NCBI GenBank assembly: GCA_965637545.1
Contig: OZ281494.1
Coordinates: 6,138,001 to 6,202,000, forward strand
DNA: 64,000 nucleotides
Source: Phallusia mammillata
Taxonomy: Eukaryota
Reading direction: 5' to 3'
This document shows positions 3,001-33,100 of this stretch, one piece after another. How positions within the stretch are numbered: position 1 is the stretch's first letter; every line of letters begins with the position of its first letter. The translations under genes and the position numbers were made by a program. The notes beneath the pieces are model-generated. The model had not been told where the DNA came from. It did no database searches and saw only the letters and a list, made by a program, of their open reading frames with translations.

Positions 3001-6000
3001 AGAAAATATACAAAACATTAATTTGTAGTTTAAAACAAATATAAGTTGACCATACTAAAATTGTATGTGTTTGGTCAAGAGTGTCAAATCAAAAAGCAAA
3101 AATGAAAATCAGCGATTTTTCGTTATGTGACAAGTACATTAAGAAACAGTAAGCTTACTATATAAAAAATAACAATGTTAAAGATATACCAATGCAACAC
3201 ATTTGAAAGACTGAATGCTTAATACTGGCGACCTTCCAAACATTTTTCATAGTGTAATAAAAGGTATCGCCGAATTGTCTTTTGTATGAAATTTTACCTC
3301 TAGGTGGTTAAAAGCTTCTTTAAATCTTCCCAGCTCTCGTTGTACAGTGTTAAGTTTCATCTCAATCTGCTCATAATCATGAACCAAGTTCCCGTAGCTG
3401 ATCTGAAGCTTCGAATTCTCGGCCGCATCTTTTTCCGTTGCCTCCGAAGCTTTCCGTGCCTCTTCCTGGAACAAGAGCGCCTCCTGGTGTTTGGTGTTGA
3501 CCAGCGCCACTAAGTGGTCTCGCTCAATGAGCAGCTGGCGGACTTGCTGCGATAGAGTCTCACGATCTCGGAGCAGAAGCTGAACTTGCTGAGATGACAC
3601 TGATGGCTCACCGCTGCCCCCCGCTGGTGAACCTAAGCAATAAAAAAATCAATTTAAGAAAAAATGTTTCTGAAATATGTCCAGATGTAGCAGATAACAA
3701 AAACATTTTTTTGAAAACAAAGAAAATATTTAAAATGCAGGGATGACTGAAATGTAATTATCAAAACGATTAAAACGTAATTTACCAAATTGCTACAAAT
3801 CCACTTATTTGCAAACCAGTATACCAATCGGAGAATTGAATACAAATGTTGTAACCATAGCCTATCACTTGTAAAAAAAATCGTCTGATTAACCACAGAA
3901 CTGGTTATAAAACTGGATTCATTCATATACAGTCTTTGAAAGTATTGTTATGCGTTTCATGTAAAAATGGAAGGTAACTTTCATGTAAAAATGACAGAAT
4001 CTGCTTTGACAGAATTTAAATATAACCCCTACCAGCTTGTTCTTGTTGGTGCAGCACATCGAGTAAAGTCTGGCACTTCTGTTTTAATGATTCAATTTCA
4101 AGATCCTTCTCACTGATGAGTTTCGATAATCTTCCAACTGTTTCTTTCGTCATTTCTTGATCAAAACCTTCATATTTTTCTTTCAATGCTCTGTTCTCAG
4201 CTTGGATCTACAAATTAAAAATGCAAAGTTAAAACAAGTTTGTGAAGAGATCATTATAGGTTGTTTTTGTTGAGTTCAAACTTAGGTTGTTAATAACCTT
4301 TATTACAAACTTATATTTCTTTTCAAATGACATTGTGATTTAAAAGGTCAGGTTTTTAAACATCATGTTTCTACTGGACAACAGTAAAAAAACAAAAATT
4401 ACTGAAATCCAGAAACTTATTTCACCTGTAAATACCTATAAAATTTGGCACACAATGCCTTAAAAGTGTCCTAAACATTTTACCAACCTCAGCCAGCTCA
4501 GTTTGTCCTGCTGAAATGGTGTCAACCATTCGTTGATTTTCGTCTTTAAGTTGTCGATTTTCTTGAGTTTTCTGTGAAATGACTGCCAGAATTTGATCTC
4601 GTTCTTCATTCAGCTGACGATATTTCTCTTCCAAATCAGCATTTGCTACATAGAGTCAAAGCTTGTTAAATAACATTATCACATAAGTAAATATAAAGGC
4701 CAACAAAAGTTATTGAGGCTTAAAAACTGTGAAACAAAGAAAATAAATGTTACCTTTTTGCAATGGTACTGATGGTGTGACTTGGCTTGTTGCTCTTAAC
4801 ATGTTGATCACTTGGTCACGCTCTGCAATTTAAAAAGATAAGATAAAAAACAACATAATTATAACAAACTGCATATAATCTAAAAACAAACACAGTCAGC
4901 TATCAAGCTATTTTTTCAAGCATTTTCACATAGCAATGTGCAAGGTAAATATATCAAGTCAGCAACAGGATTTGGACCTACAATTTAGCCGCTAACTGTT
5001 GAATCACATACCCCAATATCTGCCCTATATGATATTAGGTAATTGTCAGTTTGACCCGGCCCTACACTGTAAAGTTGTAAGACAGACTTGATTCTGAATT
5101 CAACATAGACTTATATTGAATCTAAACTTTTTCCCAATATTGAATCTAAACAAACCTTTAATAACAGCCAACAAAGAGCCAATGTCCTCCTTCGACAAAT
5201 CTCCCTTCTCCCATCCACTCAGATCCCTCTTCCGAATCTCCTGGAGCATTTTATCAACATCTTCAGGAGAAACCGATTCCTGGGGTGTGGAGTTAGCTAC
5301 CGAGATCCTCAGTTTTCCAATTTCTGATTCCAGAGTCAAAATCTTGTCCTCATATTCTTTTCTCACGTCATTATCGATCGAAGTCCGCTGCAATGCATTC
5401 TCTAGTCTTGCAACCTCCTCTTCAAGATGTTGGTTTCGATTTTTGACTGCATTAGCATCCAGCACTGATTCTGGATCTTTAGTGTTTTGGAGCTGCATCT
5501 TTTTTAGCTCGTCCACTTCAATTTTGTGATCTGCTCGCATCTTTTCAACTGCCAAGGTCATTTCTTTCTTCCAATTTCTTTTCTCCTGATCGAGATGTTC
5601 TGACATGAGTACAACATCATTTTGTGAAGCCTCCAGTTCTTCTTCAACCTCTTTAAGTTTTCGTTTCCATTCTACCTCTTTAGTTTTGAGTTCTTCCTCA
5701 AGACTTTTTAACTGATTTTTAGCAGAAGCGAGTTTTTCCTCGGACAAAGATCGCTCTTCTTGAAGTCCCACAATATCTTTCTTCAAGACTTCAATGTGTT
5801 CTTGATTTGTAAAGTTGGCATCAGCGAGAGCTTTTGAAAGTTCATCCCTGAATTCTTCCTTTAAAGCTTTAACCTTTTCCAGATGCATAGTCTTACTTTC
5901 TTCTTCATTAGCTTTGATCTTCTTATTGAACTCATCCTGCTCTTTAGCATGTTTTTCCATGATGTCCTTCTTTTCCTTTGTAAACTGTGTTTTTGTTTCA

Positions 6001-9000: not shown

Positions 9001-12000
9001 TTTAGCTCATATGTTGAACTTACTTGCTGGAATTTAAGTCATCAGACACATTTTTCAGAGCAGTCTCGAGTCGTTTCTTCTCAGCTAAAGCCTGTTCCAG
9101 ATCAGACTCCAGTTCTGTTACTTTGTCTGCAAAACAAAACCATGTAAATTTGCTAAAAACAATTCACCCATAATAAATTGGCATCAAATTTACCACAAGT
9201 TTTTCATATTCTAAAAATAGCCTCCCACTTATTAGTTCTGCTTTTTTTAAACACATTTTATACCAAAATAAGTTTTTCAAAACTAGCTTGCTTCCTATAG
9301 AGCAGCTCCAACAGAATGATGCAACGGTTGAAACAAAGCACACGCCACACATGCAGTACCAACACTACATTTGTTAAAACAACAAAGACACAAGCACTGT
9401 ATTCATTGAATCATTATTACAAAAACAAGTATAGACCCACACTTCTATGGAAAAAATGTCTTTTATACTTTATGTGAACCATATGCCAAATGTTGTAAAA
9501 GTACCTTTTTCAGTTTGCGCTTCTGCAATTGACATGTTCAATTCCTCTTCCAGATTCAGAGCAGCAGTTTGCAATTGTTCCTGTCACATAAAATAAAATG
9601 TGTTGTCTGATGTCAAAATGCAAAAATGTTTGTGGGATTCAAGACCACAACCAAAATCGTATCAAAACCAAACTGAGCTATGTGCTAGGTAGGTATTACA
9701 TAACTACATCGGTATGTTGATAATTTTTACCTTTTCCTGCATAATCTTCTGACGATCTTTCTCCAGGTTCAATCTTGCTTCTTTCACTTCCTCAAGTTCA
9801 CGTTTCAAGTCGACAACTGCTTTAGCTCGAACATCAGCTGTATCAGATGCCTTGTCAACCTGCGCAGAAATTTTTCAGGTTTGTTGCCAAGAAAATGTTC
9901 TGTTTCAGACCATATGAAGATGAATGGTGGCAGTCTTTTGGCTTTTTTGAGATTTCAACGTTAAGACAACATATGCTATCTATCTCAGTCAGACCGATTG
10001 AAAGCGCCATACCAAATCAGCCATTCACAAATCATTCCAACATATGACGAGCCACACACCAGAAAAATCTTGGTCTGGGGTGGGATTTAAACAAATGACA
10101 GGAGCCTTTTCATGACTCACGCTCTACCAACTGAGCAGGCAACTGTGCTTGTGATTCAACTTTCATGGGCTCACCATGGAACCTGTGTAGCTCAGTTGGT
10201 AGAGCGCAAGTCCCCGAAAGACTCCAGTCGTGGGCTTAAATCCTACCTGTGGCAAAATTTTTCTGCCCTGTGCCTTGCCATTTGGTAAATGCTTGGTGAC
10301 CGACTGATTCGGCATAACACCTTCAATGGGCCTGGCATACTATGATTTATGTATGAGTATGTGATCACTACTTATCATAGACACTTCAGGGTTGATATCA
10401 GTATTAATTTGTTTATCTTAACTGTTATTTTGTATTACAACATGACACACACATGTTTGAATCTGCAAGCAATATATTTCAGAGGTTCTTAATACCTTTT
10501 CAGTATTTGACTTATGACCAAGTTCATCCTGGTATCTGTCAAGCATATTCTGCAGCGATTCTTTCTCAGTTTGCCATTCTCTTTGAACAAGCTCGTACTG
10601 AGCGATCTCCAGTTCATAGTCTTCAACCTGTATATTAATAACGCTTGTTAAGACAGTGCATTCCATCTTGTATCCACTGTCAAACGCATTTTGTCCAGCA
10701 AAACACACATCATTGCACAAAACAAAATAAAAAATGAGTAGGAAAGAAAGGAGACAGAAATCATTTGCACTATTTTGTTCCGTTGATAAAAAATCTAAGT
10801 AGGTTTGTTATATTGCTATTGTGTCGCTATGTTTTCTTTCACCAAGCGAAATAAACTCAACTCAACTCATATTATTAGCTGAAGTTGAGGTAAGTTACAT
10901 GCAAAAAGAATTGGCAGTGTTAAAACTGTGTTTAACAATTTTTCCGTTCAACTGGTGTAATGCTAAACAAAATACTAGTCGTTGTTTCAAAAACTTGTAT
11001 TTTTGCTAACGTTTCGTCCACCAGAACGGTAGAGCTTCATCACAGCAATGAATGATGTATTGCGAGCAAAAAGTGAGAAAGCGCAAGGAACTAATATCGG
11101 AAATTTGATGGAGAGATTGGACGTACAATGTCGAGGATAACTGGGAAAATTTGTTAAATATGCAACCTGGTGGACGAAACGCCTGTTCAGTAACTGTGTT
11201 ACAGAAATTTGGTTACCACAAAAACATTAGCCGGCAGAACACAAACAGTATACAATTAACACATAACATTGGTCTTTATCTAACCTGTTTCTGTAATGCG
11301 GCCAACGTCATCGTCAAGTCACCAGCCACAGCGCTGACCTCTTCATCACCATTGTCATGATGCCCATTGTCGTCGGCAACCAGCAGAAATTTTTCATCAT
11401 TATCTTCTCTCATCTTGCTCTGTGGAGAGCTCTGATAAAGAGGTTTGAAGATGGGACGAGGAATTGCCGAAGTCTGTCGAGACTGTGGACCCTTTTTTTC
11501 ATCAGAAAATGACCTACAAATGGAAAATACAACTTTAAAACAAACAGAAAAATCTTAACGCAAAATACAAAAAATGCCAAAACAGTAGTGTATAAATTGT
11601 TTGATCCTATGGCATAACGCAGAACTATTCTATTTTTGATGCCATATGGGAATGCTTGGATATACGAGTGTGCCATGATCACTGGTCAGCATAGACGCTT
11701 CAAGGTTGATCCCAGTTATGAATTTATGTTCATTTTTACTGATTGCTGGTTAATCCGGCGATCCCATACTAGAAAGGTGACATGTGCAGCATACAAGGCA
11801 GGCAATGGTACTTGTGATTCGACTTTCGATGGGTTCACTGCTGAGCCTATGTAGCTCAGTTGGTAGAGCGCGAGTCCCGAAAAGACTCCTGTCATGGGTT
11901 CGAATCCCACTGCAAGCTCGATTTTTGCTGACCTACACCCTCCATTATATAATGTAAAAATGACAAACCATACCTTTCCAGTTTTCTCGGCTTTGTGTCT

Positions 12001-15000
12001 TTTGTGACATCATTGTCATGCTTGAGTGATTCAACCTCCACCTGAAGTTTGTCGTTGTTTTCTTTCAACAGTTTAATTTTTTGTGCAATATCAGCAGCTG
12101 ATAGCGGTGCAGGGTTTTCACTCATATGTTCATCTTTGTCAGGTAAAACTGATTGCCTAATATCTGTAAAATAATAATTCCATGTTTTAAAAAAGGCTAC
12201 CAAAACTTTTATTGCTTTAACACTTTTGATTTCAGAAAAAAGAAAAACATTTCTTGCCGACATGAAATAGCAAGCTGCAGATAGTGTACACTGTTTCGAT
12301 CTATAGCAGGGGTGGGCAACATACGGCCCGCGGGCCGGATCCGGCCCGCGACGGGATTTTGAGCGGCCCGCGGACAGTTTCCGGTCTTACATGATAATGT
12401 GGCCCGCGGTCACAGTCTGCCGCAATCCCCCATTACTTGCTTCCTACGTCAAATTACAGTTGTAACGCTCCCCAATAGCAAAAAAATTTCCCGCCGTTGT
12501 TACCATTGCACCATACGTCCATTGTTACGACATAACTACCAACCTTGTGTGTGTCCTACTTTAACGGTTTTCTTTGTTTCCACACGTATAGCCTAGTTCA
12601 GGGGTGGGGAACCTGCGGCCTAAAGGCCACATGCAGCCTTTTAGGGCACTAAGTGCGGCTTTCGATGGCAAAATACATTTTTAAGATGTTGATATAACCG
12701 ACTGCACCAGGCGCTGAAAAAAAATAGACAGAAACGTATTTTTGACCTTATTGCAGATTATTTTTTGATTAGTTCCAGGGCAGCGGTTTTCAAACAAGAC
12801 CCATGTGGTCCCATAGTGGTACATAAAGCGATTTCCATAGTTAGGACTACCAAAAACTCCAGGTTCAGCAATTTCTAGGTTAAATAAATCCTGAATGTTG
12901 TAGTGAAGATGAAAATGTAGTGAGGAATTTTAATTAGCTGGGACCGTAAGTTCTACAAACTACGAGGAAATAGCAAAACGACCATTCTGTAAGTCAAAAA
13001 GTTTGAACATCACTGCCCTTGGCCTGGAAAATAGTCTATGCGGCCTACACGAGTGACGATAAATCGTTTGGTAGCCTTTATAAACAAAAAGGTTCCCCAC
13101 CCCTGGTTTAGGTGGTCAAAATTCCGTTTTAAATCACTGGATAAATACGCGATTAATGTATCGATTCATGAATCCGGCCCGCCAAGTGCTTCATTTTCCC
13201 ATATCAGGCCCGCCAACTGGAGAAGTTGCCCGCCCCTGATCTATAGGGTCTCATCTATGCAGTTGGTGACATTAGATAGGCTGTATTGGCTAATGCAGCC
13301 ATCCAGCGGCACAGTTTGTCAAAAACCATGCCTTACATATTCTGTTGATGCCACAACTGGACATAAACCACAGATGATCTGCAGCTTATCGTTTCTTGGC
13401 TTGATGCTTTCACAATGATCTGGTATACTGTATAAAAAAAGTGCATACCGGTCCACCTAAATTTTCGAGACACTCAAATGTAGGATTAAAATCATGACAT
13501 TATTTGCACCTTTTGTGAAAATATTCAGTTTTTTGGGCAACACAAGATTTTAAGTGCTGACACAAGTTTTAGGCTAAAATACAGGAAGAATTCATAAAAT
13601 TTACGCTAGGCACCTTAACACTACATGGTTAAGATTGATCACTATATTAGGCAACATCAGGTTTGTGAGAAAAGTTCTAGTAAAAATGTCAAGGGTTATA
13701 GGAGTGGACATTTTAACAATAGGTCCCTTGAAATTCCTGGCACAGAGCGGGATCGGTAAAGCAAACAAGAAGCATGCCAGCCCTACACACTGATCACTTA
13801 TCAGCACACACATTCCACGTCTGGAGTTTATCTGAAACTACTCAACCATAAACAGCTCAACTGCTTCATAAGAAAACTATTCAGAGCATCCGGTTTTCCC
13901 AAATACCTTTTTCGCATTTGAAAAATATTTTTTTTATTTGCTCTTAGTATGGAATGGTTTTGTAAGTAATACTACTAAACTAACCACATCTTGCATACAG
14001 TTAAAACATCTAAAAAAGAAATAAATTTTGACACTGAAATAAAACCTAAAAAATCTAAGAATGAAAAATATTTTCCTTGCAACGAAATCAGTCGATAAAT
14101 ATTTTTATTCCATGACATTCATCGATTGTTTTAATTACAAGGAAAATATTTTCCATTATTGGCTATTTAATTACATAAATGGTGATTGTCGATGACCATG
14201 CTGCATGAAAGGACCGATACTATTCAGTTCAAACACTCTCCGCCAAAAAATCTACTACAAATAAATTGTTTTTTAAGTTTTTTGCTTTTACCCATTTTTT
14301 GTTTTTTACAACAAATTCACATCTAAACACTGTTTTATATTTTAGAAATCAGATTAAATAACTTCACACTGCAATAGTTGGCCAAAAAAGTTGACCAACT
14401 GCCTACCAAGCTACTGGTAACCAACTAAACAAGCAGTAACCAACCAGGTTTCAGCCCTACATGGTAACCTAACAGATAAATGAGAATCGACGGGTAATGT
14501 TTCTAGGGCAGGAATGGCATTTATTGGAATTAATTGTCTGCCGAAGAAAGACAAAGAGATGGTCCAAACATTAGAACAATCAGAGGATTGTTGTACAATC
14601 TTGTTCGAGAATCAAGTTTCACGCGGGCAACGAATGTCTGTAAACCAATCTATTCAAAGATGGACTGGTTTTCAGGAGGATTTGATGGGAACACATTAAC
14701 TATAAAAGTTGACAGTTTGGCCAGCGAGAGTGCTGTCACACTCTAGGTTAAGTTTTGAAAAGTACATGCCACAATATATAACTCTATTCGCTTCAATAAA
14801 AAAAAAACTGTCATGTCATAAAAGGCACTTACTGCCTATTCAAACGATTTAAAAATTAAAAACATAAAAATTGGTCAAATTAATTGAAATTTTGTTTCAA
14901 GCTCTTCAAGCCATTGTATCAAATATATATCTTACATTTTTTTAATTTTTTGGGGTGTCAGAAAGAGGGTTCAAAACATTTTTTGAAACAGATCAATACA

Positions 15001-24000: not shown

Positions 24001-27000
24001 ACCGAAGTATTGCTTTAACATGACAGTTGGCCTACATGGTGTCATTCAGTTATTGGGCAATACGAAAGAAAGGCACGACGTTTTGTTGAGTTTAATCCCA
24101 TATTTCGACAATTCCATGTAACTTTCCCGACAAGTCCAGGGTTTAGTTGTGAAAACAAACAGCCATTATGGAGTAAGAATAAACTACAAAGCTTGAAGCC
24201 AACCTTCTCGACAGTAAAGACCCGCACAGACAAACATGATTGTGACGTCATCATCCCGTTTACGTAAGGACTGCGTGTTCATTGTAAAAGCAGCAGGGAG
24301 GGAGAGGTTTTTGTGGTTTATCAAGTTAGTGTCTCGCTTTTATCGTTTGGTTTCCAAGATGCGCTTATTTGACAAAGTTTAAAACCAACAGGCAAGATAG
24401 AAAACGGCGATTAAAGACTAAAATTTCAACATTGCATGTCAACAGTGCTCAAAAATAACACCAAAAAACACCCATTTTTAACTTAGCGCCTGACTCTCTG
24501 ATACGAAGCAGTTTAAAAACGTAATAACACTTTAGCGCCAACATGCGGATTAGTTAAATTGTAGAAAAAATCAGTGCCACGTTGGCCAAGCTTTCTGGTC
24601 CTTCCAACAACAACTTTCAAGTAGTGGTGCTCAGCGCAAACAGACAATAGAAAACTGGAGTTCACTGAACAAAGGCAGAGATTTGCTATAGAATAGTTTG
24701 CTGACATAGACTCACTTTTTTCTAAACCAATGTTTTTGCCAAATCGAATTTCAGTACAGGATTTATTACTGAGCTTGACCACATATTTTGTATTGATAAA
24801 CGTAGATTGGGTTTAGATACAACTGAGATAAAAGTTTGCATGAAACATACACAAAGTTGTAATTTTTTTTCATTTCTGCTATACACACATTTACCAACTT
24901 AACCATGTGAAAATACCACACAAATATTTTAACATTTCATGTCTAAACAACATGATACAAAACAAATGTACTTGTACATCTACATAATGTATATGTATGA
25001 TGTACATTTACAGTCATTTCCAACAGCCATTTTATGTAACATATCAATATAAAAGCATTGCAGCTTATCATACAAACACTACTACAAGATTTTTTTTTTT
25101 CAAAACAGCACTGTTTAGAAAACTAAAATTGTCCAAACAAAAAATACCCCAACTGTACCTTGTATCGTTGTTACTATCAGTAATTATCCATTTTATTGCA
25201 GCACAAACCAGACTGACACAGTAAAACCTGGCTATTAATTAACTGACAACCTTGTTTATTAAACAACAACTTCAGCTCTGATACAACTTAAAAGATAAGT
25301 GGCAGAGCAAGGGTTGGCAAACAGCAGGCCAGTGCTCTACCGTGAGGGTCACTGAGCTGTACAAAAAGAATATATGCAGACAAAACGATGGTTTTATTGA
25401 ATATCAACCATACATGGGAAGGACCTCAATACTATAAACAGTCTCACTCTTTTTTAATCAGTTTAATAATGCAAATGTTTTTTTTGCTTGAGCATAATGT
25501 GAAAAACAACCTAAACAGGTCAATAAGGTTATCACAAAGGGAGAAAAAATACTTTTATCTATCACAACTGGGGTTAAGAATTTGTTAAACATTAAATCAG
25601 AAATCGCCATGTTGCAAATTACTACTAGATGTGTTTGTATTAAAAGTTTATTTATTCATGTCACACTCGTTAAATTGTAAATGTGAAACAAAACACAAAA
25701 ATGTTGTGATATAAGTTAAAGGGTATTTTTATGAGTTGCACACAGCACAGCACAACAAACCAAGAACATTTGTATTGTAAGGGATCTTTGCAAGTTATTT
25801 TACAACCAGAAAGGCATTTCCCCACACACAGACACACATGGCTCAATTGCACTTTGGCCCAGCATGTCTGCAACCAACTGCTGCAGAATACTGGAGTAGG
25901 CAGTTTCAGTGTTACAATAAGAATATAACAGCAATCTATTGCTTAGAACTGTGGTTCTCAACCTTTTTTACTATGCGACCCCCTTTAGAGATTTTCTAAC
26001 ACCACGCGACCCCTATACATACGCACATACACAAGAAGTTTAACTATCAGCATGTGTTGATTGTGTTCATCACACATTTGCAATCTTAACGTGGCTGCAA
26101 TAGTTCGGCGTTTTGCTGTATTCCGGAAAACCCCTATTTTTCACTAACTATTTCACTATTTCGTGTTTTTTTATGTTAAGAAAAACCAAAACCCGCAATT
26201 ATAGAAGTATACAATCGCAAATAATGTTGCGCCCGTTCTAAATCAAACGGTCGTGTGAGTTACTACATGCTAAACAAAAGTCACAGGGAAAGTTTTTATG
26301 ATACAGATAAAGTATTCCGTGTTCGGTTACGTCTCCGTGACCCCCTCAAAAGTGCTTGACGACCCCTTGGGGGGTCGCGACCCCCAGGTTGAGAAACACT
26401 GGCTTAGAATGTAATTAAGTTTGTTTTACGTAAATAATCCTGAAAAAATTGTTATGGTAATTTTTACCATATTTTTTTTGCACACATTAATTTTCTACCT
26501 GTTGTTGCTGCAGTTTTGCTTCATATTCATGAGACAGGCTACTTGCTTCTAAACTTGCTGTCCTTGCTTTTTCCTGAAGAACTGAGTTAGACTGAACATG
26601 CTTCGAAATCTGTGTGTACACAAATAAAACATTACAGTAAAAGTTTCATAAAAAGTGCATTGTGCAAATATCAAAGGTATCATTCCAAAATTACATTGCT
26701 GTTCCTTCAAAAAAATGACATTGTTAAAAAACCAAGATACCAGCTGCATCAAAAATATATAATTATTCTACTATCTTGGTTGGTAATGTTACAAACCAGG
26801 TTTTTAAATTTATACAATTTGGCCTTGAGATTTTTTTGAGTCAAATAAGTACTGGAATACAAATACATTTTGTGACAACAACATCAAATAAAAGTATTTA
26901 CCTCTGCTTCTTTCTCATTAATATATGCTTCAGCTTCGATGAGTTTCATCCGCAAGCGACGAACTTCTGCCTCATAATCTGAGTAAAATTGATATAACTT

Positions 27001-27381
27001 CAATCAATTGTTTATTATTACCCGCGAACCAGATATAACTTTGTAGAATTCACCAAATATTATTAATTACACCACATTTTTTTTTCAAAAAAGTCAGCTT
27101 TCGAACTAATTTAAAAGTAGACTTAAACTATTAAAGCAAAAATAAACAGATTTTGAAAAAGCTAAACAAATGTCCAAAGGTAACTTTAAAATATAATCAA
27201 GCAACTACAACCAGCAATGCAGAATTAATTACAACTAGAAATCAAAATAAATCCTACCAAGATCTTCATCCGTTCCTTCAGCTAAAACTTCTTTTGTAAA
27301 TGTTGATAGTTGTCCACCAATTTGACCAGTTATGTTTGAAATTTGATTGAAACTGTCATTTAACCCTCCAATCCAAGACAT
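1..27381 (-). CDS. TRIP11: TRIP11/GMAP-210 golgin, multi-exon, 3' end (GRAB domain) outside window
   Basis: Exon 1 (27381-27258) encodes MSWIGGLNDSFNQISNITGQIGGQLSTFTKEVLAEGTDEDL, matching the ALPS-type GMAP-210 N-terminus. Exons 26978-26902, 26609-26499 and 17648-17403 (FDDVISSQREVNRLSYELSRV) are phase-compatible; the exon near 4030-4205 encodes RLSKLISEKDLEIESLKQKCQTLLDVL, a conserved TRIP11 block; a large coiled-coil exon spans ~5100-7585. Many further short coiled-coil exons with GT-AG ends. Confidence 0.93.
2313..2460 (+). mobile_element. Degenerate tRNA-derived SINE with CORE-like block
   Basis: GCCGAGA...TCTCAGC acceptor-like pairing, A-box-like TGGTGGAGTGTTTAG, B-box-like GGTTTTAATCC, then GTGTCCCTAAGAAAGATACT resembling the GTGTCCTTGGGCAAGACACT core. 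Confidence 0.6.
8280..8725. mobile_element. MITE with TIRs and internal GGTACTC/GGTATC repeats
   Basis: TAGTAATGGGACG ... CGTCCCATCACTA terminal inverted repeats with subterminal ggtactc iterations at both ends. Confidence 0.8.
9975..10345. mobile_element. Head-to-head pair of tRNA-derived SINE copies
   Basis: Minus-strand GCTCAGTTGGTAGAGC head (10136-10121) and plus-strand TAGCTCAGTTGGTAGAGC head (10188-10205), each followed by a homologous ~120-nt body starting ATTTTTCTG; ~40-nt spacer. Confidence 0.8.
11797..11918 (+). mobile_element. tRNA-like SINE head (tRNA-Phe-like, GAA) preceded by the same spacer as the 10.1-kb pair
   Basis: 11845-11918 folds as a cloverleaf (GCTC/GAGC D-stem, GAGTC/GACTC anticodon stem, GGTTCGAATCC) but has acceptor-stem mismatches; the upstream 48 nt match 10135-10180. 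Confidence 0.75.
12307..13238. mobile_element. hAT-type MITE containing nested MITEs at 12599-13105 and 12781-13015
   Basis: CAGGGGTGGGCAAC...GTTGCCCGCCCCTG with perfect TSD ATCTATAG; middle CAGGGGTGGGGAACC...GGTTCCCCACCCCTG; inner CAGCGGTTTTCAAAC...GTTTGAACATCACTG. Confidence 0.9.
17828..18049 (-). CDS. Candidate 73-aa small ORF with a signal-peptide-like N-terminus
   Basis: CCAAAATG start about 40 nt after the acceptor; MPGLASVLFAILLCSSSIQT followed by RK and KR dibasic sites and several Cys. An internal GTAAGG donor at 17964 could truncate it to 28 aa. Confidence 0.3.
   Translation of the reverse strand: MPGLASVLFAILLCSSSIQTMFDRKPYLCKGSCVIDKRAMCQITPVAKILKASVTFFAFSYANFRNIHFCYQN
18604..18726 (-). 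promoter_or_regulatory. Internal TATA+Inr core promoter and 91-nt non-coding first exon within TRIP11 intron 3
   Basis: Minus strand: TTATAAA (18726-18720), Inr-like CAGTT with A at 18694 (about 31 nt from the TATA start), ATG-free exon ending in a GTAAGA donor (18603). The acceptor-like ACAAAACAG lies at ~18090. Confidence 0.55.
21864..22048. mobile_element. Tc1/pogo (Tigger-like) MITE with TA TSD
   Basis: TA-CATTGAACCTCGGTTAA ... TTAACTGCGGTTTATTG-TA; a decayed relative lies at ~44270-44380. Confidence 0.65.
25949..26401. mobile_element. hAT-type MITE
   Basis: CTGTGGTTCTCAACC...GGTTGAGAAACACTG; TSD GCTTAGAA on both sides. Confidence 0.88.
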
Positions 27382-27399
27382 TTTAACAGGAGAACGTCA

Positions 27400-28013
27400 A
27401 CAAAACTTACGACATGTATATACTAATTTAAACAAATTTCAAAACGCAACTCAAGCATATATTGCACCTTTTCAAAATAGTATTTTCAGAAGTTTTGTCT
27501 TAAAAGACAAATTTATACAAAATTTAATAAGCTCAACTCGTAAACTTGTAAATTTTGCATCAAACACTAAAAGATGATTTTGTTAACTTTAAGAGAAGCA
27601 AGGATTAGAATCGAGAAACACGTGAAATCAACGTTTTTCGAACAAATATATTTTTTGTACAACAACGCATACATAGTTACGTCACAGAAGTCACGCATGA
27701 TAGTTTTTGTTCATGCGTAACATTGTGTTTTTCATGCGTAACGGATCAATTATGCATGTAAATGTATTTCATGCAGTAGTTTTTTCACAAAAATCGTTTA
27801 TTTTATTTTCTAAAAAACACAATAGTTTAAGAGATGTCATATTTTGTGTAATTTTTATTTCACGAGATAGAGATTATCTTGAAGGTCATACTATTTTCGT
27901 ATGCCTGTTGTCGATTGAACAAAGATTGTTTTGGTCCTGGTTAAAACGACCTGCGTAATTTTTGCCAATTACAGCAATTGTACCGAAGTAACCAAAAGTC
28001 GAAGCAATAAGCC
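27400..28013. promoter_or_regulatory. Shared divergent promoter region of TRIP11 and OPA3
   Basis: The start codons are 632 nt apart in head-to-head orientation; CpG-retaining segment with TTACGTCA (CRE-like) near 27677. Confidence 0.55.
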
Positions 28014-29133
28014 ATGGTGCTGGGTATACCCATTGCCAAACTGGTTCCGGAGTTATTCAAGGCCATGACCAAGCCAATGGTGAACGGTTTAAAACGAAAC
28101 GTCCGAAAAAGTCCCTTTTGGAAAGACAGAGTTTTCATTCCAATGGCGCAACGTGAGTTTGAGTGACCGGTTTTTAGTTTTGGAATTAATCAAATAGAGT
28201 AATGCAGAAACCAGGGAAATATTCCTATTTGATGATGTAACGTGTATGTAATCAGTTTTATAAACAAACGTCGTTTCTCAAACGACGGTGTTGACAATTT
28301 GACAACAACTGTTACCTAATCATTTTTTCTTTCAGTTAGGTAATGTACATTTGTAGTTCAGACCAGAGTCATATAGAAACTTCAGTAGAGACTAATAGTT
28401 TTTTCTTCTGTTTTACTGACATTGTATGTTAAATAGATCTATTTAACCATTAGTGTTGTATTTGTTTGATATAAAAGATGGTTTTGGGAGTGCCACTGTT
28501 TAAGTTGGCCCCATTAGCATTTAAAATTGTCACAAAACCAATTGTTGATCTGTTGAAACGCAATGTGAAGAAAAGCCCATTTTGGAAAGACCAGATTTTT
28601 CTGCCTTTAGCAACAAGTAAGACAACCTAAACTAAGTTAATTCTGCTGTTTGCTCCATGTACCTTTGCAAGTAAATATTTTTTAACTTTTTCAATTTTGC
28701 AGATTACAACAAGGCTTCAGTTCGAGTTCGATTGTGGAATCAAGGTATCCATAGAAACAAAGAACAAGTTGAGCGTTCTGCCAGAATGAGTGAAGAAGCA
28801 GCGTTAGAGCTCGGAGCTGAAATTGTCGCCAACACAACTACCTTTATTATTGGACTCATGGCAATTTTGATGCAACAATCAATTGCTAGTGCTACAGAGA
28901 AAAAGAAAGAGTTCGAAGAAAATGCGGAGTCAAAACGGATAGAGTCAGCGATTTTGGACATTCGACGTCAAGTTTTGGACTTGGGTTTAACTGTTGAGCA
29001 GCTTGACGCAAGAATGAGAGAAATGAATCGGACAATTACTGCAATGAAATCATATAACCAAGCTTCTACAGAAGTTGCTGCTAACAATGGTTCAGATAAA
29101 GTTTCAATTAAAGTCAAACACAATTCTTCCTGA
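28014..29133 (+). CDS. OPA3: OPA3-family mitochondrial protein, isoform using exon 1A (28014-28152) + exon 2 (28703-29133)
   Basis: Exon 1A: MVLGIPIAKLVPELFKAMTKPMVNGLKRNVRKSPFWKDRVFIPMAQ, phase-1 donor GTGAG. Exon 2 contains EEAALELGAEIVANTTTFIIG and a coiled-coil tail, matching OPA3 (EEAAAELGAELLGE). The intron falls at the same phase-1 position as in human OPA3. Confidence 0.85.
28478..29133 (+). CDS. OPA3: OPA3-family protein, isoform using duplicated exon 1B (28478-28616) + exon 2
   Basis: Exon 1B: MVLGVPLFKLAPLAFKIVTKPIVDLLKRNVKKSPFWKDQIFLPLAT, also 139 nt with a phase-1 donor (GTAAG), in frame with exon 2. Confidence 0.88.
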
Positions 29134-30150
29134 CCTGAACTTTCAAAAAACAGTTCAGGGGTTTGTTTAATTACTCCCTAGCACAATTTGTTTTAATCTA
29201 GTACCACTAATTAAAGTTGCAAATTGCTTTTCATACAATTGTCAACAGATTTCAAGGTGAAATACTGTTATGTAGCGTTACACTTACCCATAATTAGTAC
29301 TTATTACTTTTTTTTTGTATAGTGTTTTAATTGTAACAGAAATCTATTCTTATGATTAATTATGCAAACCAGCTTAGTTTTGTAGTACGCCAACTTTATT
29401 TTATACCAACCCTATAAGAACTATAATACGAACTGTGGCCATCTGCTATAGATAGCATTTTTTGCATGCAACTAACTTCAATGCTGTTATTATATTATAC
29501 ACCTCCCTTTCAGAACTATTGATTGGTCCACATGATTACAAGATTGTTGATTTGATAGTTTACCGTTATGATTGCAAGCCTGTTGTTTTTCACTTTACTA
29601 TTCAGACATTTTATATCTACATATGATCAGTAGTAGGATTCAATTTTTTATTCAGCCGGTTCACAAAAGTCCTGTTTTTCAACTAGTTCTGTTGCAAAAA
29701 GTCCATTGACAGTAACCAGTAATGCTAACTGGTTCAAATTTCATGCGACGGTTCTATAGAACTGGTGCGAACTGGCTGAATCCCACAACTGCATATGATA
29801 CATCTCTTGTCACTTATTACATCAAGTCTTTAATAGGAGTGATATATGGAAAATGATGTATAGTTTCTCTTCTTTATTTTGCAAACGGGTAAAATGACAT
29901 GTATAAAAATAGAGCAATAATATAAATGTCTACTCAAAAATAATAAAACACAGCTCTTTTTGTCAAAGCATTGAAAATTTTTAACATAAAATGTGTGACC
30001 AAGTTTTGATCTTGCACATTTCAACATGATGCAATACTTATATCTTCACTGTTCAACATGGAAAAACTTAACCTCGTATATTCAGAACAAGTCTCTCATT
30101 TGGAGGTAGCTACTAACTGTGTTTCAGATGTGTCTTACAACCATGAACTT

Positions 30151-33100
30151 TTAGTTCTTTCTTTCAATTTCCTTCATATATTGTTGCAATGCATCAAGTC
30201 TAGCGTCAATTTCGTCCATATCTGTGTCCTTGGTTGCTCGTTTTTGGCGTGTCTCATGTCGCTTGATATCTGGTGTGCTCGACAAGCGCCTATCGCTCAC
30301 CATACTTGGATATGTCGGGCTGTCATCCCAGGCCTGTGGTTTTCTGTTCAAAAATAAACCAGAAATGTATGATTAAGATGTTCAATGTATAAGTGGAAGT
30401 GGAATTCGTAACTAATTCACACTTTTGTATTTTGTTCTGCTGATGTCTGACCAGTTAAACTTTTATGACAAAATGTGTCATAGTGTACACACTTGTGGAC
30501 ATATATAATATACCAGTGGTTCCCAACATTTATCAATGAAATTCCTTTCATATTAATTCAAAACAAAATTGGGTATTTTATTAACTTTACAGTAAAATTC
30601 CCAGAGCTTAAGGGTTTATTTTACAAACCAAATCTACAAATTAAAGGAAATTTGTCCCCTAAAGTTTTAAAATTCCTTACAGGTTGGGAACCACTGTATT
30701 ATACCATTAAAATTGTGAAATATGTTTGAGCAGTTAACCGACTTATTTTGAGCCTGTGGACAAGGAAGTCTGGTCACAACTGTTGAACTAGCTTGAAAAG
30801 AATGTTTTACCACTCTAAAAAATGTTTTGTTTTTTTATCCCAACCTTTTTGTTCTGATGCGAGTGATGGATCCGTTATCAGATGAATTTCGACTTTCAAT
30901 TGAACCAGTTCTTCTTCGGAATCCAGCCGAGTATCGTTCCCTTGACGATGAGAAATCATTTCCTCGTGAATATCGAGTTCTCGTTCTTCCACGAGATTCG
31001 TTAGAACCAGGAATAAAACCAGCGGAAGTTCTTCTATTTCTGTTGTAAAAAGTCAGTTTGCTAAAAGGGTTTGCACAGCTAAGATATGTCTGTAACCAAA
31101 GGCAGATTTTGGTACCCTAAATACAACCTTATAATTAGCCTATTTTTTTTTAAATGTCTCATGAGTAGTACACAGTGAATACATCAGAAAACACAAACTC
31201 TTTTTTTTTGGACTAAAACTAAAAAACATGTTACTTGATGAACTGGTGATTACAGATGCAATGTATAATATTTTTAGTCAGAAATATGGACAAGACCACA
31301 GCATTTTTGTGAGTATTGTACTAATGCAACCTTGCATTTTTTGTCTAAGGACATGGCCAAATATACAACATTCTAGAAAAATATTGATTAGTTACAATGC
31401 TGTAAAACATTTTTTAACTTACAATCTTTCTTTTGACTGCTGAAGCTTTCTCTTTTTTTCTTCAATGTAGAGTGTTGGGTTAAACCTTGAAAATCTGTTG
31501 GGGGTTGGAGTTCTACTTTTATATCCATCCCTGCAAAAAGAACAAAATATTCCAATAAAATGTAACACTCCAAGCACCTCAAAATGTTGTAATTTTGGTG
31601 TCTCAATGACTTTTTTGCTAAATGAAACATTGGTTTTACCACAAACAGGTATTTTTTTAGGTAACAGTTTTGAATTTGTAGCAATATCTTTCAAAAAACT
31701 ACCACTAACCTGCTTAAAAATGACTTTTTATCTTGTGATATTGATCGTTCCCTCCTCGGTGCAGGACGATCTCGAGAAGATGATCGGTTTTGTTGATAAA
31801 ATGACCCTGACCTTGACCCTCTTGATGTTGACCTTCGTGCAGCAGTTGAACCAGGTCGTGCCCCAGTATTAGGTCGGGTCGCAGAATTACGGGTGGCTGA
31901 GTAAAGGTTTTGGTTTGACCGAGTTCGCGAAGCAGGTCGGTCTACGTTTGGGGTGCGACTGTAAAAAAATTTTGTTTTAGTTAAATAAGGTCCTTTTACC
32001 ATTTTTTGTATTTTCTAATAACTAAATATTGTTTGAAATAGTACAAACGTGAATCTCATAAAAATCTACCCAATCAGCCATAGGCTTTCTGTGTTTTTGA
32101 AGTGGAATATAAAATTAAGCTAGTATGTTCCAGTGAGTTGCCTCATTTTTGTAAATAAGATTAATCAGTTTGCTTTACTTAAAAATGGGTAAAGTAATTT
32201 ATTGAGGCAAATAAATAAGCATAAAGAACTTTCTATTATAGAGATAAAATTTCATTTTTTTACCTTCTCTTGTACATCGCCAATTCATTAGTAAGACTTT
32301 TCACTCTGATTTGTAGGGTTCGTTCTCGAGCAGTTATCTCATTCAACTGAAAAAAAAAAATTTTACCAGTTTAGTTTCAAAACACTTTACTCAAAAACAC
32401 ATATTGTCTGTTGTTTTACCTCTGACGTTAGTCTCTTGACATCTGCAGATTTCTTGGAAATCTGTCGTTGAAATCTGTTTTTTTCTTTCATCATTTCGAG
32501 CTCGAGGTTTTGAACAACCTTCTTCAGAATTTTAACCTAAAAGCACATACAATACAATTTCAAATAAAATACAGACAAACAATCATTGCAACCTTGGAAT
32601 CACAAGACATTTAACTGTGCAACCACCTACCTCTTTGGATGCTGAAAGTTTCCCAACACTTTGTGTTTCACGTTTCATCTCATTAAGCGCTGTTTCAAGT
32701 CTGTTTTTATCCTCCAATAGACATTCGTAACTATACATAACAATACAAAACCTGGTTAGATCTGTTTAATTACTGAAAAAAATGTTTTTGTAGTTTACCA
32801 CCTACTTCAATATTAATTCATTCAAACAAACTATTCGCAGATTAATCAATTCTACTCTTAATTTGTTTAAATGGTTTACCATTTACTAAGTTTACAAAAT
32901 TCCTGGAGGTAAGTACTAAAATCTTGCTATATATACATTAGTAAAGAAACTATTCGCTAAAATTACAAGGAGAAAGTTTCGCAAGTTTCTGGTAATGATA
33001 ATAATCGTTCTTAGGAAAGAACGAAAAACATTTCAAGCATTAAGTTGAAGTTTTTTTGGAGCTTCTATGTAATTTTATAAAGGTCCTTACTTTTCTTTCA

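What the first reader, a model, noticed from the sequence alone, without database searches (positions are those of the whole stretch)
28014..29133. OPA3 with tandem-duplicated first coding exons: two alternative mitochondrial-targeting N-termini
Seen: exons 1A and 1B are both 139 nt with an intact ATG, frame and phase-1 donor, 29/46 aa identical with mostly conservative changes and heavy silent divergence, and there is only one exon 2. Joining 1A to 1B would frameshift, so they are mutually exclusive. Each ATG has an upstream AG acceptor (27974-75; 28476-77). Known: human OPA3 has the mirror arrangement (one exon 1, two alternative exon 2s). Inference: independent isoform diversification, here of the targeting/import segment, possibly under separate promoters or trans-splice acceptors.
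Basis: partly seen in the sequence, partly recalled or inferred. Interest (0 to 1): 0.7.

Follow-up and report, generated by a model that had tools for sequence, protein, structure and literature searches.

The report
OPA3 gene with two alternative first exons

Summary
Exons 1A (28014-28152) and 1B (28478-28616) are both 139 nt, start with ATG and end at a phase-1 GT donor. They share 29/46 residues, with silent sites saturated. There is one exon 2 (28703-29133).

The window is Phallusia mammillata. Only the 1A isoform is in the protein collection.

RNA-derived contigs from four runs in four studies cover both first exons and stop exactly at both donors. The introns are empty. In one run the letters before 28703 are an exact mix of the 1A and 1B ends, so both junctions exist. 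1B is about 61-71% of the exon-1 contig depth (a poor measure), and 1A plus 1B roughly equals exon 2.

The arrangement is not specific to Phallusia. Clavelina and Styela carry the same 139-nt pair in their genomes. Ciona savignyi has both isoforms, and for C. intestinalis only the B form was retrieved. A-type exons group together across species (moderate support), so the duplication predates the ascidian orders. Decapod crustaceans have a separate pair.

The most likely mechanism is two start sites, with probable spliced-leader addition at the 1B acceptor. This is inferred, not shown. Any difference in targeting is untested.

It is a new member of a known kind: an N-terminal substitution derived from tandem exon duplication. 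This scan had no earlier OPA3 note.

The parts
27258..27480 (-). First exon of the divergent neighbour gene. Other first-stage notes call it TRIP11; I did not test that. Its 5' end lies about 380 nt or less from the 5' end of the OPA3 1A leader.
   Evidence: RNA contigs 27258-27467/27480 in all four runs belong to records of 1.2-4.4 kb that match only here, so they are spliced. ORF 27235-27381 on the minus strand.
27857..28013 (+). 5' leader of the 1A transcript, colinear with the genome. It contains the AG at 27974-75, which the contigs run through.
   Evidence: The contigs start at 27857, 27868, 27875 and 27918 and run unbroken to 28152 (table 8).
28014..28152 (+). Exon 1A coding part: 139 nt, ATG to a phase-1 donor. 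This is the A-type N-terminus, with Glu at residue 13.
   Evidence: The exact protein is in NCBI and UniProt for Phallusia mammillata.
28153..28477 (+). The 325-nt interval between 1A and 1B. It is an intron for 1A transcripts. Its last 15-42 nt appear as a colinear 1B leader, and the acceptor AG at 28476-77 abuts the 1B ATG. It probably holds the 1B start site.
   Evidence: Depth is 0 in the bins covering 28170-28403 in all four runs. The 1B contigs start at 28436, 28460 and 28463 (colinear), and at 28475 preceded by 21 non-genomic letters in run X4.
28478..28616 (+). Exon 1B coding part: 139 nt, ATG to a phase-1 donor. This is the B-type N-terminus, with Leu at residue 13 as in non-tunicate OPA3.
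   Evidence: The isoform is not in the protein collection.
28617..28702 (+). 86-nt intron between 1B and exon 2. Its acceptor is shared with the 550-nt 1A intron (28153-28702).
   Evidence: The listed contigs end at 28616 and resume at 28703.
28703..29133 (+). Shared exon 2 coding part, 143 codons including the split one and the hydrophobic segment, ending in TGA.
   Evidence: There is a synonymous G/A polymorphism at 28734, with both alleles present in all four runs.
29134..29638 (+). 3' untranslated region; this is its minimum extent.
   Evidence: Contigs 28735-29638, 28735-29541 and 28735-29288 (table 8).

Best explanation
This is the OPA3 gene of the ascidian Phallusia mammillata. Its ancestral first coding exon was duplicated in tandem before the ascidian orders diverged. 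Both copies have been kept under purifying selection ever since.

Shown here: each copy carries its own ATG and donor. Each is spliced to the single exon 2 in mature RNA. The two resulting 189-residue proteins differ only in residues 1-47, and both are present together in every sample examined. 1B is the more abundant form by contig depth.

Inferred: the choice is made mainly at transcription initiation. 1A transcripts start at or before 27857, in the roughly 380-nt region shared head-to-head with the neighbour gene. Their donor skips the weak 1B acceptor and joins exon 2. 1B transcripts start inside the 325-nt interval, between about 28404 and 28436. On these transcripts the acceptor at 28476-77 has no upstream donor. 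By the rule described for Ciona, it should then receive the spliced leader, which would place the leader directly before the 1B AUG.

A transcript that includes both exons is out of frame and stops 8 codons into 1B. That keeps the two proteins mutually exclusive.

In function, exon 1 encodes the first helix and half of the second helix of the OPA3 domain. In human OPA3 this is the segment described as the mitochondrial leader and targeting signal. B keeps the ancestral, more hydrophobic form. A is a derived form with a fixed Glu13. The two proteins therefore most likely differ in membrane targeting, insertion or partner binding, not in the body of the protein.
For: - **Family:** both isoforms match Pfam OPA3 PF07047 at 83.6 and 83.7 bits, against a cut-off of 25.7.
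- **Species:** the 1A isoform is an exact match to a Phallusia mammillata record.
- **Expression and junctions, four runs from four studies:**
  - 1A contigs end exactly at 28152 and 1B contigs end exactly at 28616. Each continues for 19 further letters.
  - Depth is 0 over the bins 28170-28403.
  - In X4 the loose end before 28703 reads AATAGCAAAAA with agreement 0.68. This is exactly what the last 11 nt of 1A and of 1B give when merged.
  - Depths of 1A and 1B are 9.1+22.7, 24.1+40.1, 28.9+46.1 and 7.7+14.4. Exon 2 depths are 31.3, 78.7, 102.8 and 25.4.
- **Conservation:**
  - A-type and B-type isoforms with an identical remainder occur in Clavelina, Ciona savignyi and Styela. In C. intestinalis only the B form was retrieved.
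  - The genomic order 1A-1B-2, with all first exons 139 nt long, holds in Clavelina L001 and Styela L002.
  - A-type exons form one clade with 81/79 support inside a tunicate clade with 100/99 support.
  - pN is 0.10-0.15 between A orthologues and 0.12-0.28 between B orthologues, while pS is saturated.
- **Separate start sites:**
  - The 1B contigs are colinear upstream to 28436.
  - B-type mRNA contigs of other tunicates carry leaders of 335 nt (L008) and 31 nt (L009) with no A exon in them.
- **Spliced leader:**
  - In X4 all three 5' ends carry extra non-genomic letters: 9 on the neighbour gene, 7 on 1A and 21 on 1B.
  - The 1B match starts at 28475, three bases before the exon. The Ciona leader ATTCTATTTGAATAAG ends in AAG, which equals the genome at 28475-77 (PMC1488885).
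  - Subtracting the 7-9 extra letters from 21 leaves 12-14. The 16-nt leader minus the 3 shared bases is 13.
- **A versus B:**
  - Residue 13 is Glu in all six A-types. It is Leu in all eight B-types and all nine non-tunicate sequences in that alignment.
  - Kyte-Doolittle mean over residues 1-24 is 0.61-0.86 for A and 1.14-1.45 for B.
- **Human comparison:**
  - The N-terminus is described as a leader and targeting signal.
  - Exon 1 ends at c.142, which is the same intron phase (PMC3987911).
Against: - Contigs cannot show transcript starts, so no start site is demonstrated.
- The 21 non-genomic letters were not displayed, so the spliced leader is inferred only from lengths and from the 3-base overlap.
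- The colinear 1B leaders could come from unprocessed precursor RNA.
- Gene models in Clavelina (P0002) and Styela (P0008) join 1A to an acceptor 27 or 24 nt upstream of the 1B ATG. 1B can therefore behave as an internal exon, and one promoter may be enough.
- Contig depth is a poor measure of abundance.
- No localisation data exist for any ascidian OPA3.
- The structure model is of low confidence (pLDDT 60.9).
Confidence: 0.6

Rival explanations
1. One promoter, with the choice made by splicing. All transcripts start upstream of 1A. The 1A donor joins either exon 2, giving the A protein, or the 1B acceptor, giving a 1A>1B>2 mRNA. In that mRNA the 1A reading frame acts as a short upstream ORF that stops early, and the B protein is made by re-initiation or leaky scanning at the 1B AUG.
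For: - RefSeq isoform X1 of Clavelina and of Styela is exactly such a 1A>1B>2 model. It is read from an out-of-frame ATG inside 1A: the motif AHFGK..QW is the +1 frame of KSPFWKD.
- A good acceptor sits just upstream of the 1B ATG in all three genomes.
- The Penaeus type-2 mRNA contig L007 carries the end of the type-1 exon, a TGA formed at the junction, a 104-nt spacer, and then the type-2 ATG.
Against: - In Phallusia, 1B depth falls short of exon 2 depth by about the 1A depth in all four runs.
- The 1A contigs continue for the same 19 letters as the 1B contigs, and the X4 loose end shows 1A joined directly to 28703.
- No listed contig joins 28152 to 28478.
- The 1B contigs start colinearly at 28436-28463, not with 1A sequence.
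- B-type mRNA contigs L008 and L009 contain no A exon.
- A 54-codon upstream ORF that ends well before the last junction would be a poor way to express the more abundant isoform.
Confidence: 0.2
2. One of the two exons is a decaying relic or is never translated. In that case only one protein matters and the other junction is splicing noise.
For: Only the 1A isoform is in the public protein collection for Phallusia. In one styelid RNA contig (L010) the A-type exon starts with GTG in place of ATG.
Against: - Both exons keep their ATG, frame, length (139 nt) and donor in three ascidian orders.
- Silent sites are saturated while pN is only 0.10-0.28.
- Both are present at comparable depth in four runs from four studies.
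Confidence: 0.03
3. Assembly artefact: two paralogous OPA3 genes were collapsed so that one lost its exon 2.
For: None found.
Against: - The same 1A-1B-2 order with a single exon 2 occurs in the independent assemblies of Clavelina and Styela.
- DNA runs hold 94-96% of the sampled words of this stretch.
- Both exons are joined to the same exon 2 sequence in RNA.
- There is no second exon 2 in the 64 kb.
Confidence: 0.01

Closest known systems
N-terminal tandem exon duplication-derived substitutions (homologous alternative first coding exons), as catalogued for human genes in PMC8373072
   Same: Two adjacent homologous coding exons of equal length and phase each carry a start codon and each is joined to the same downstream exon. 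They give proteins with homologous but different N-termini, and the pair is deeply conserved. That paper attributes such N-terminal cases to duplicated 5' coding exons used through alternative promoters.
   Different: This case is in a trans-splicing animal, so the second exon's acceptor may take a spliced leader. The promoter of the second exon has not been demonstrated. OPA3 is not mentioned in the main text of that paper.
Human OPA3 isoforms OPA3A and OPA3B (exon 1 joined to exon 2 or to exon 3)
   Same: It is the same gene family, with the same two-exon ground plan and the same phase-1 intron after about 46-47 codons. One exon has a homologous alternative that gives two proteins (PMC3249181; PMC3987911).
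   Different: In mammals the second exon is the one that alternates, the extra form is reported as mammal-specific, and it is weakly expressed. In ascidians the first exon alternates, the pair is older than the ascidian orders, and both forms are well represented in RNA contigs. These are independent events.
Decapod crustacean OPA3 isoforms (Penaeus vannamei P0036/P0044; Cherax quadricarinatus P0041/P0042)
   Same: There are two alternative N-termini of about 46-47 residues on an identical remainder, and the switch is at the same position. Both types are conserved between shrimp and crayfish.
   Different: The two decapod types group with each other and away from the tunicate exons (83/88 and 100/99), so this is a separate duplication. 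I could not obtain the genomic arrangement. The one mRNA contig seen carries both exons (L007).
Strict mutually exclusive splicing clusters of internal exons (for example Dscam or tropomyosin)
   Same: The exons are homologous tandem copies whose length is not a multiple of three, so including both breaks the frame.
   Different: Here both exons are first coding exons with their own AUG, and no upstream constitutive exon is seen in RNA. The 233-450 nt between the two exons in the three genomes excludes steric hindrance between splice sites. I did not look for competing RNA structures.

Membership tests
OPA3 protein family (Pfam PF07047) | Match to the family profile above the curated cut-off | tested here: met
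   Both isoforms match at 83.6 and 83.7 bits against a cut-off of 25.7, residues 8-130 on profile positions 1-118 of 121.
OPA3 protein family (Pfam PF07047) | Ancestral gene plan: a first coding exon of about 46-47 codons ending in phase 1, then one large exon | tested here: met
   139 nt is 46 codons plus 1 base. Human exon 1 ends at c.142, which is 47 codons plus 1 base, going by the variant names c.142+5G>C and c.143-1G>C (PMC3987911).
Tandem exon duplication-derived N-terminal substitution | Two adjacent homologous exons of the same length and phase | tested here: met
   Both exons are 139 nt, 63% identical in protein, with E = 1e-18.
Tandem exon duplication-derived N-terminal substitution | Each exon is joined to the same downstream exon in mature RNA | tested here: met
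   Contigs end exactly at both donors in four runs. The loose end before 28703 in X4 is the merge of both exon ends.
Tandem exon duplication-derived N-terminal substitution | Both exons conserved across species | tested here: met
   The pair is present in Phallusia, Clavelina, Ciona savignyi and Styela. A-types form one clade. pN is 0.10-0.28 with saturated pS.
Tandem exon duplication-derived N-terminal substitution | Choice made through alternative promoters | tested here: inconclusive
   The 1B leaders are colinear to 28436, and relatives have B-type mRNAs without an A exon. Contigs cannot show start sites, and gene models with 1A>1B>2 exist in relatives.
Strict mutually exclusive splicing of internal exons | The alternative exons are internal, flanked on both sides by constitutive exons of one transcript | tested here: not met
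   Both exons carry the start codon. The 1A leader is colinear with the genome back to 27857, with no upstream exon seen.
Spliced-leader trans-spliced ascidian mRNA | The 16-nt leader is joined at an acceptor that has no upstream donor | tested here: inconclusive
   One contig in X4 has 21 non-genomic letters before 28475. The length and the AAG overlap fit the Ciona leader, but the letters themselves were not shown.

The most novel reading that the evidence does not exclude
OPA3 has acquired a pair of homologous alternative exons three separate times: exon 1 in ascidians, exon 1 in decapods, and exon 2 in mammals. This would point to a recurrent need for two forms of this poorly understood membrane protein. 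In ascidians the choice would be made by an unusual switch. A transcript that starts upstream cis-splices past 1B. A transcript that starts inside the intron leaves the 1B acceptor unpaired and takes the spliced leader. The derived Glu13 form and the ancestral hydrophobic form would then go to different membranes or different import routes.
Probability: 0.2. Interest if true: 0.6.

Novelty: new member of a known kind. Interest (0 to 1): 0.38.

Why it matters
The molecular role of OPA3 is still unclear, although defects in it cause Costeff syndrome and a dominant form of optic atrophy. Nature has here kept two versions of exactly the N-terminal segment, with a single diagnostic change (Glu versus Leu at residue 13) fixed across every ascidian sequence sampled. 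This gives a ready-made pair for asking what that segment does, in embryos where tagged constructs are easy to express.

For annotation:
- The more abundant Phallusia isoform (1B) is missing from the protein collection searched.
- The X1 models in Clavelina and Styela start from an out-of-frame ATG inside 1A and are probably not real proteins.

For evolution, the repeated, independent duplication of an OPA3 exon in three lineages is a small but clean example of convergent isoform gain.

Tried and rejected
- **Structure prediction.** A model of the A isoform from a 22-sequence alignment gave pLDDT 60.9 and pTM 0.30. It is all helical, with helices at 7-32 and 34-59. That is too weak for a fold search or for mapping A/B differences, so I used it only for the helix boundaries.
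- **Loci of unknown tunicates.** I fetched L003-L006 with 3-kb flanks. Only L005 reached an exon 1, a B-like one at 549-686. The others have longer introns, so they say nothing about the pair.
- **Loci not on record.** The Ciona intestinalis (P0006) and Cherax (P0041) loci were not on record. The Penaeus look-up returned an RNA contig, not the genome.
- **Spliced leader in the window.** A search for the Ciona leader gave only a chance-level hit with 2 mismatches at 10576.
- **RNA families.** Rfam and tRNA scans of 27000-30500 and 29400-30000 found nothing.
- **TATAAAAG at 28470-77.** I considered it as a TATA box and rejected it, because it would place the start inside the coding sequence.
- **AG at 27974-75.** I rejected it as the main 5' end of 1A mRNAs, because all four 1A contigs run through it.
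- **Literature.** No paper in the library discusses OPA3 exon duplication in tunicates. The only paper holding both 'OPA3' and 'Ciona' is about Dact genes.
- **Earlier notes.** This scan held no OPA3 entry.

Full report
**1. What is in the sequence**

The coordinates in the finding are exact.
- Exon 1A runs from the ATG at 28014 to 28152, followed by GTGAGT.
- Exon 1B runs from the ATG at 28478 to 28616, followed by GTAAGA.
- Exon 2 starts at 28703 behind a strong acceptor (ttttgcag) and ends with TGA at 29131-29133.
- Both first exons are 139 nt, which is 46 codons plus one base.

The two peptides share 29 of 46 residues. Nucleotide identity is 79/139. By codon position the identity is 29, 37 and 13 of 46, so silent positions are at random level while second positions are conserved.

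Reciprocal tblastn of one peptide onto the other's exon gives E = 1e-18. The 64-kb window holds no third exon 1 and no second exon 2. A blind repeat search returns the pair as family D4.

Joining 1A to 1B shifts the frame and stops after eight codons of 1B.

**2. Identity**

Either exon 1 joined to exon 2 gives a 189-residue protein. Both match Pfam OPA3 (PF07047) at 83.6 and 83.7 bits, against a cut-off of 25.7.

The 1A protein is identical to a public record for the ascidian Phallusia mammillata (CAB3264566.1 / A0A6F9DNL1). The 1B protein is not in the collection of about 15 billion sequences.

On the opposite strand, the first exon of the neighbour gene lies at 27258-27480. Other first-stage notes call it TRIP11; I did not test that name. 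OPA3 and this neighbour are therefore head to head.

**3. Are both exons used?**

Fourteen listed runs held about 60-65% of the sampled words of 27900-29300. That is what exons without introns would give. Two other runs held 94-96%, which fits genomic DNA.

I laid contigs of four runs from four studies on 27000-30500. The runs behave as RNA:
- The bins covering 28170-28403 have depth 0 in all four.
- The neighbour's exon is part of records of 1.2-4.4 kb that match only 210-223 nt here.

In every run one contig covers the 1A leader and exon and ends exactly at 28152. These contigs start at 27857, 27868, 27875 and 27918. Another contig covers 1B and ends exactly at 28616. These start at 28436, 28460, 28463 and 28475. 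Each contig continues for 19 further letters that do not lie next door.

Those 19 letters were too short to be reported as a joint. Run X4 has a loose end of 11 letters before 28703, taken from two contigs, with consensus AATAGCAAAAA and agreement 0.68.
- The last 11 nt of 1A are AATGGCGCAAC.
- The last 11 nt of 1B are TTTAGCAACAA.
- Merging them with ties broken alphabetically gives exactly that consensus.
- The expected agreement is (4 + 7 x 0.5) / 11 = 0.68.

So both junctions, 28152>28703 and 28616>28703, are present.

Contig depths are as follows.

| Run | 1A | 1B | 1A + 1B | Exon 2 (both alleles at 28734) | 1B share |
|---|---|---|---|---|---|
| X1 | 9.1 | 22.7 | 31.8 | 31.3 | 71% |
| X3 | 24.1 | 40.1 | 64.2 | 78.7 | 62% |
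| X4 | 28.9 | 46.1 | 75.0 | 102.8 | 61% |
| X17 | 7.7 | 14.4 | 22.1 | 25.4 | 65% |

Depth of contigs is a poor measure. Even so, the additivity in four samples is what mutually exclusive use predicts. It is not what routine inclusion of both exons predicts.

**4. Is it peculiar to Phallusia?**

No. A word search with the 1B protein found pairs of proteins with identical remainders and A-type or B-type starts in three species:
- Clavelina lepadiformis: P0003 is A and P0002 is B.
- Ciona savignyi: P0004 is A and P0005 is B.
- Styela clava: P0007 is A and P0008 is B.

Ciona intestinalis yielded a B-type protein only (P0006).

The genomic loci show the same order:
- Clavelina L001: 1A 4001-4139, 1B 4400-4538, exon 2 from 4739.
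- Styela L002: 1A 4001-4139, 1B 4614-4752, exon 2 from about 5389.
- Every first exon is 139 nt.

Together with Phallusia and Ciona, these species represent the groups conventionally treated as the three ascidian orders. That classification is from my own knowledge; no tool here gave the taxonomy.

A tree of the exon-1 peptides (46 columns, so modest power) gives the following:
- All tunicate exons fall in one clade (100/99).
- All six A-types fall in one clade (81/79).
- The B-types are unresolved at the base of the tunicate clade.

Silent differences between any two exons are saturated (pS 0.55-1.05). Replacement differences are 0.10-0.15 between A orthologues, 0.12-0.28 between B orthologues and 0.21-0.28 between A and B.

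The duplication is therefore older than the split of the ascidian orders, and both copies have been under purifying selection since then.

**5. Which copy is the new one?**

Residue 13 is Glu in all six A-types. It is Leu in all eight B-types and in all nine non-tunicate OPA3 sequences in that alignment.

B-types are consistently more hydrophobic over residues 1-24. The Kyte-Doolittle mean is 1.14-1.45 for B and 0.61-0.86 for A. Net charge is similar.

B is thus the ancestral-like form and A the derived one, although A lies first in the gene and is the better conserved.

**6. How the choice is made**

*Shown.* The 1A leader is colinear with the genome back to at least 27857. It runs through the AG at 27974-75, so that AG is not the main 5' end. 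The 1B contigs are colinear back to 28436, 28460 and 28463 in three runs. The bins upstream, covering 28170-28403, are empty.

*Inferred.* 1B has its own start site in the 325-nt interval.

*Support from relatives.* B-type mRNA contigs from other tunicates carry leaders of 335 nt (L008) and 31 nt (L009) that contain no A exon.

In run X4 the 1B contig instead starts at 28475, preceded by 21 letters that do not fit the genome. In that run, and only in that run, the neighbour's 5' end has 9 extra letters and the 1A 5' end has 7. This looks like a library that keeps a short adapter remnant at true 5' ends.

Subtracting 7-9 from 21 leaves 12-14 letters. The ascidian spliced leader described for Ciona is the 16-nt ATTCTATTTGAATAAG (PMC1488885). 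Its last three bases, AAG, equal the genome at 28475-77. A leader joined at the AG of 28476-77 would therefore leave 13 letters unmatched and would make the match start at 28475, as observed. The end of exon 1A (..CAAC) would not do this. I could not see the letters, so this remains an inference.

It fits the rule quoted in the same paper: trans-splicing occurs at acceptors that have no upstream donor in the transcript. That is the situation of the 1B acceptor only if transcription starts inside the interval.

**7. The rival: one promoter**

The RefSeq isoforms X1 of Clavelina and Styela have an N-terminal extension with a shared motif, AHFG[KR]..[FY]L[FY]QW. This motif is the +1 reading frame of the conserved KSPFWKD.. 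part of exon 1A. The same frame in Phallusia reads PFGKTEFSFQW.

These models are transcripts in which 1A is joined to an acceptor 27 nt (Clavelina, AG at 4371-72) or 24 nt (Styela, AG at 4588-89) upstream of the 1B ATG. They are read from an out-of-frame ATG inside 1A. They show that 1B can be modelled as an internal exon. The extension itself is most likely a product of picking the longest ORF.

In Phallusia three things argue that such transcripts are minor:
- Depths of 1A and 1B add up to exon 2 depth.
- The direct 1A>exon 2 junction is present.
- No listed contig joins 1A to 1B.

Contigs drop rare forms, so I cannot exclude such transcripts.

**8. Function**

The human literature describes the N-terminus of OPA3 as a mitochondrial leader and targeting signal. 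It places the end of exon 1 at c.142, the same intron phase as here (PMC3987911).

A structure model of the A isoform is of low confidence (pLDDT 60.9). It is entirely helical, and exon 1 covers helix 7-32 and half of helix 34-59.

It is a reasonable inference that the two forms differ in targeting, insertion or partner binding. It is untested.

**9. Comparison with what is known**

The class is known. Tandemly duplicated 5' coding exons used through alternative promoters give homologous N-termini. 39 such N-terminal events are catalogued in human genes, and they are unusually well conserved (PMC8373072).

Human OPA3 alternates its second exon instead. The extra form is reported as mammal-specific and weakly expressed (PMC3249181).

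The ascidian isoforms are already in public annotation. I found no paper that describes them, and this scan had no earlier OPA3 note.

**10. A parallel in crustaceans**

The profile search also returned decapod OPA3 pairs with the same kind of N-terminal swap: Penaeus vannamei P0036/P0044, and Cherax P0041/P0042 under one locus tag.

The two decapod types group together and away from the tunicates (83/88), so this is a separate duplication.

The one Penaeus mRNA contig for the second type (L007) carries four elements in order:
- the end of the first type's exon;
- a TGA created at the junction;
- a 104-nt spacer;
- the second type's ATG.

There, inclusion of both exons is real in at least one transcript.

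**11. Verdict**

The thing is ordinary in kind, ancient, and shared by the ascidians sampled. What remains open is the start-site and leader mechanism, and whether the two N-termini do different things.

Noticed in passing
P0036/P0044 (Penaeus vannamei), P0041/P0042 (Cherax quadricarinatus); L007:1-340: Decapod OPA3 also has two alternative homologous N-terminal exons of about 46-47 residues on an identical remainder, conserved between shrimp and crayfish, and duplicated independently of the ascidian pair. The Penaeus mRNA contig L007 for the second type still carries the end of the first type's exon, with a TGA formed at the junction, then 104 nt, then the second ATG.
   Followed up: partly
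L001:4071-4399 (Clavelina) and L002:4086-4613 (Styela): RefSeq isoform X1 of OPA3 in both species begins at an out-of-frame ATG inside exon 1A and reads through a 1A>1B junction. The 26-32 residue extension is the +1 frame of conserved coding sequence and is probably an artefact of choosing the longest ORF.
   Followed up: yes
L010:312-314: In a styelid RNA contig (Logan SRR32906204) the otherwise well conserved A-type exon begins with GTG in place of ATG, with an in-frame stop just upstream. This could be loss of the A start codon in that species, a non-AUG start, or an error. The contig also begins with a Nextera adapter remnant.
   Followed up: no
window 29686-29791: A stretch of about 105 nt downstream of OPA3, partly palindromic (aaccagt..actggtt), has RNA-contig depth in the thousands. 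It is found in 10-22 contigs per run with many different flanks, so it is a dispersed repeat that is present in many transcripts. There is no Rfam or tRNA match.
   Followed up: partly
window 10165-10246, 11829-11910 and inverted 10080-10136: Three copies of a tRNA-like sequence (GTAGCTCAGTTGGTAGAGCGC...), 80-86% alike, two direct and one inverted. They are probably tRNA-derived repeats or tRNA genes inside the neighbour gene's introns.
   Followed up: no
window 28734: A synonymous G/A polymorphism (TTG/TTA, Leu) in exon 2, with both alleles present at similar depth in all four RNA runs from four studies. The contig breaks 19 nt into exon 2 suggest a second variable site near 28722.
   Followed up: partly
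window 12330-13243 and 61146-61608: Three inverted-repeat blocks of 85-140 nt, 88-93% complementary, lie about 48 kb apart. They are probably two copies of one mobile element in opposite orientation.
   Followed up: no
L001, L002 and window 27258-27480: The upstream neighbour of OPA3 differs in each ascidian: a Hikeshi-like gene in Clavelina, an MRPL44-like gene in Styela, and the divergent gene called TRIP11 in Phallusia. The exon pair is conserved while the surrounding gene order is not.
   Followed up: no
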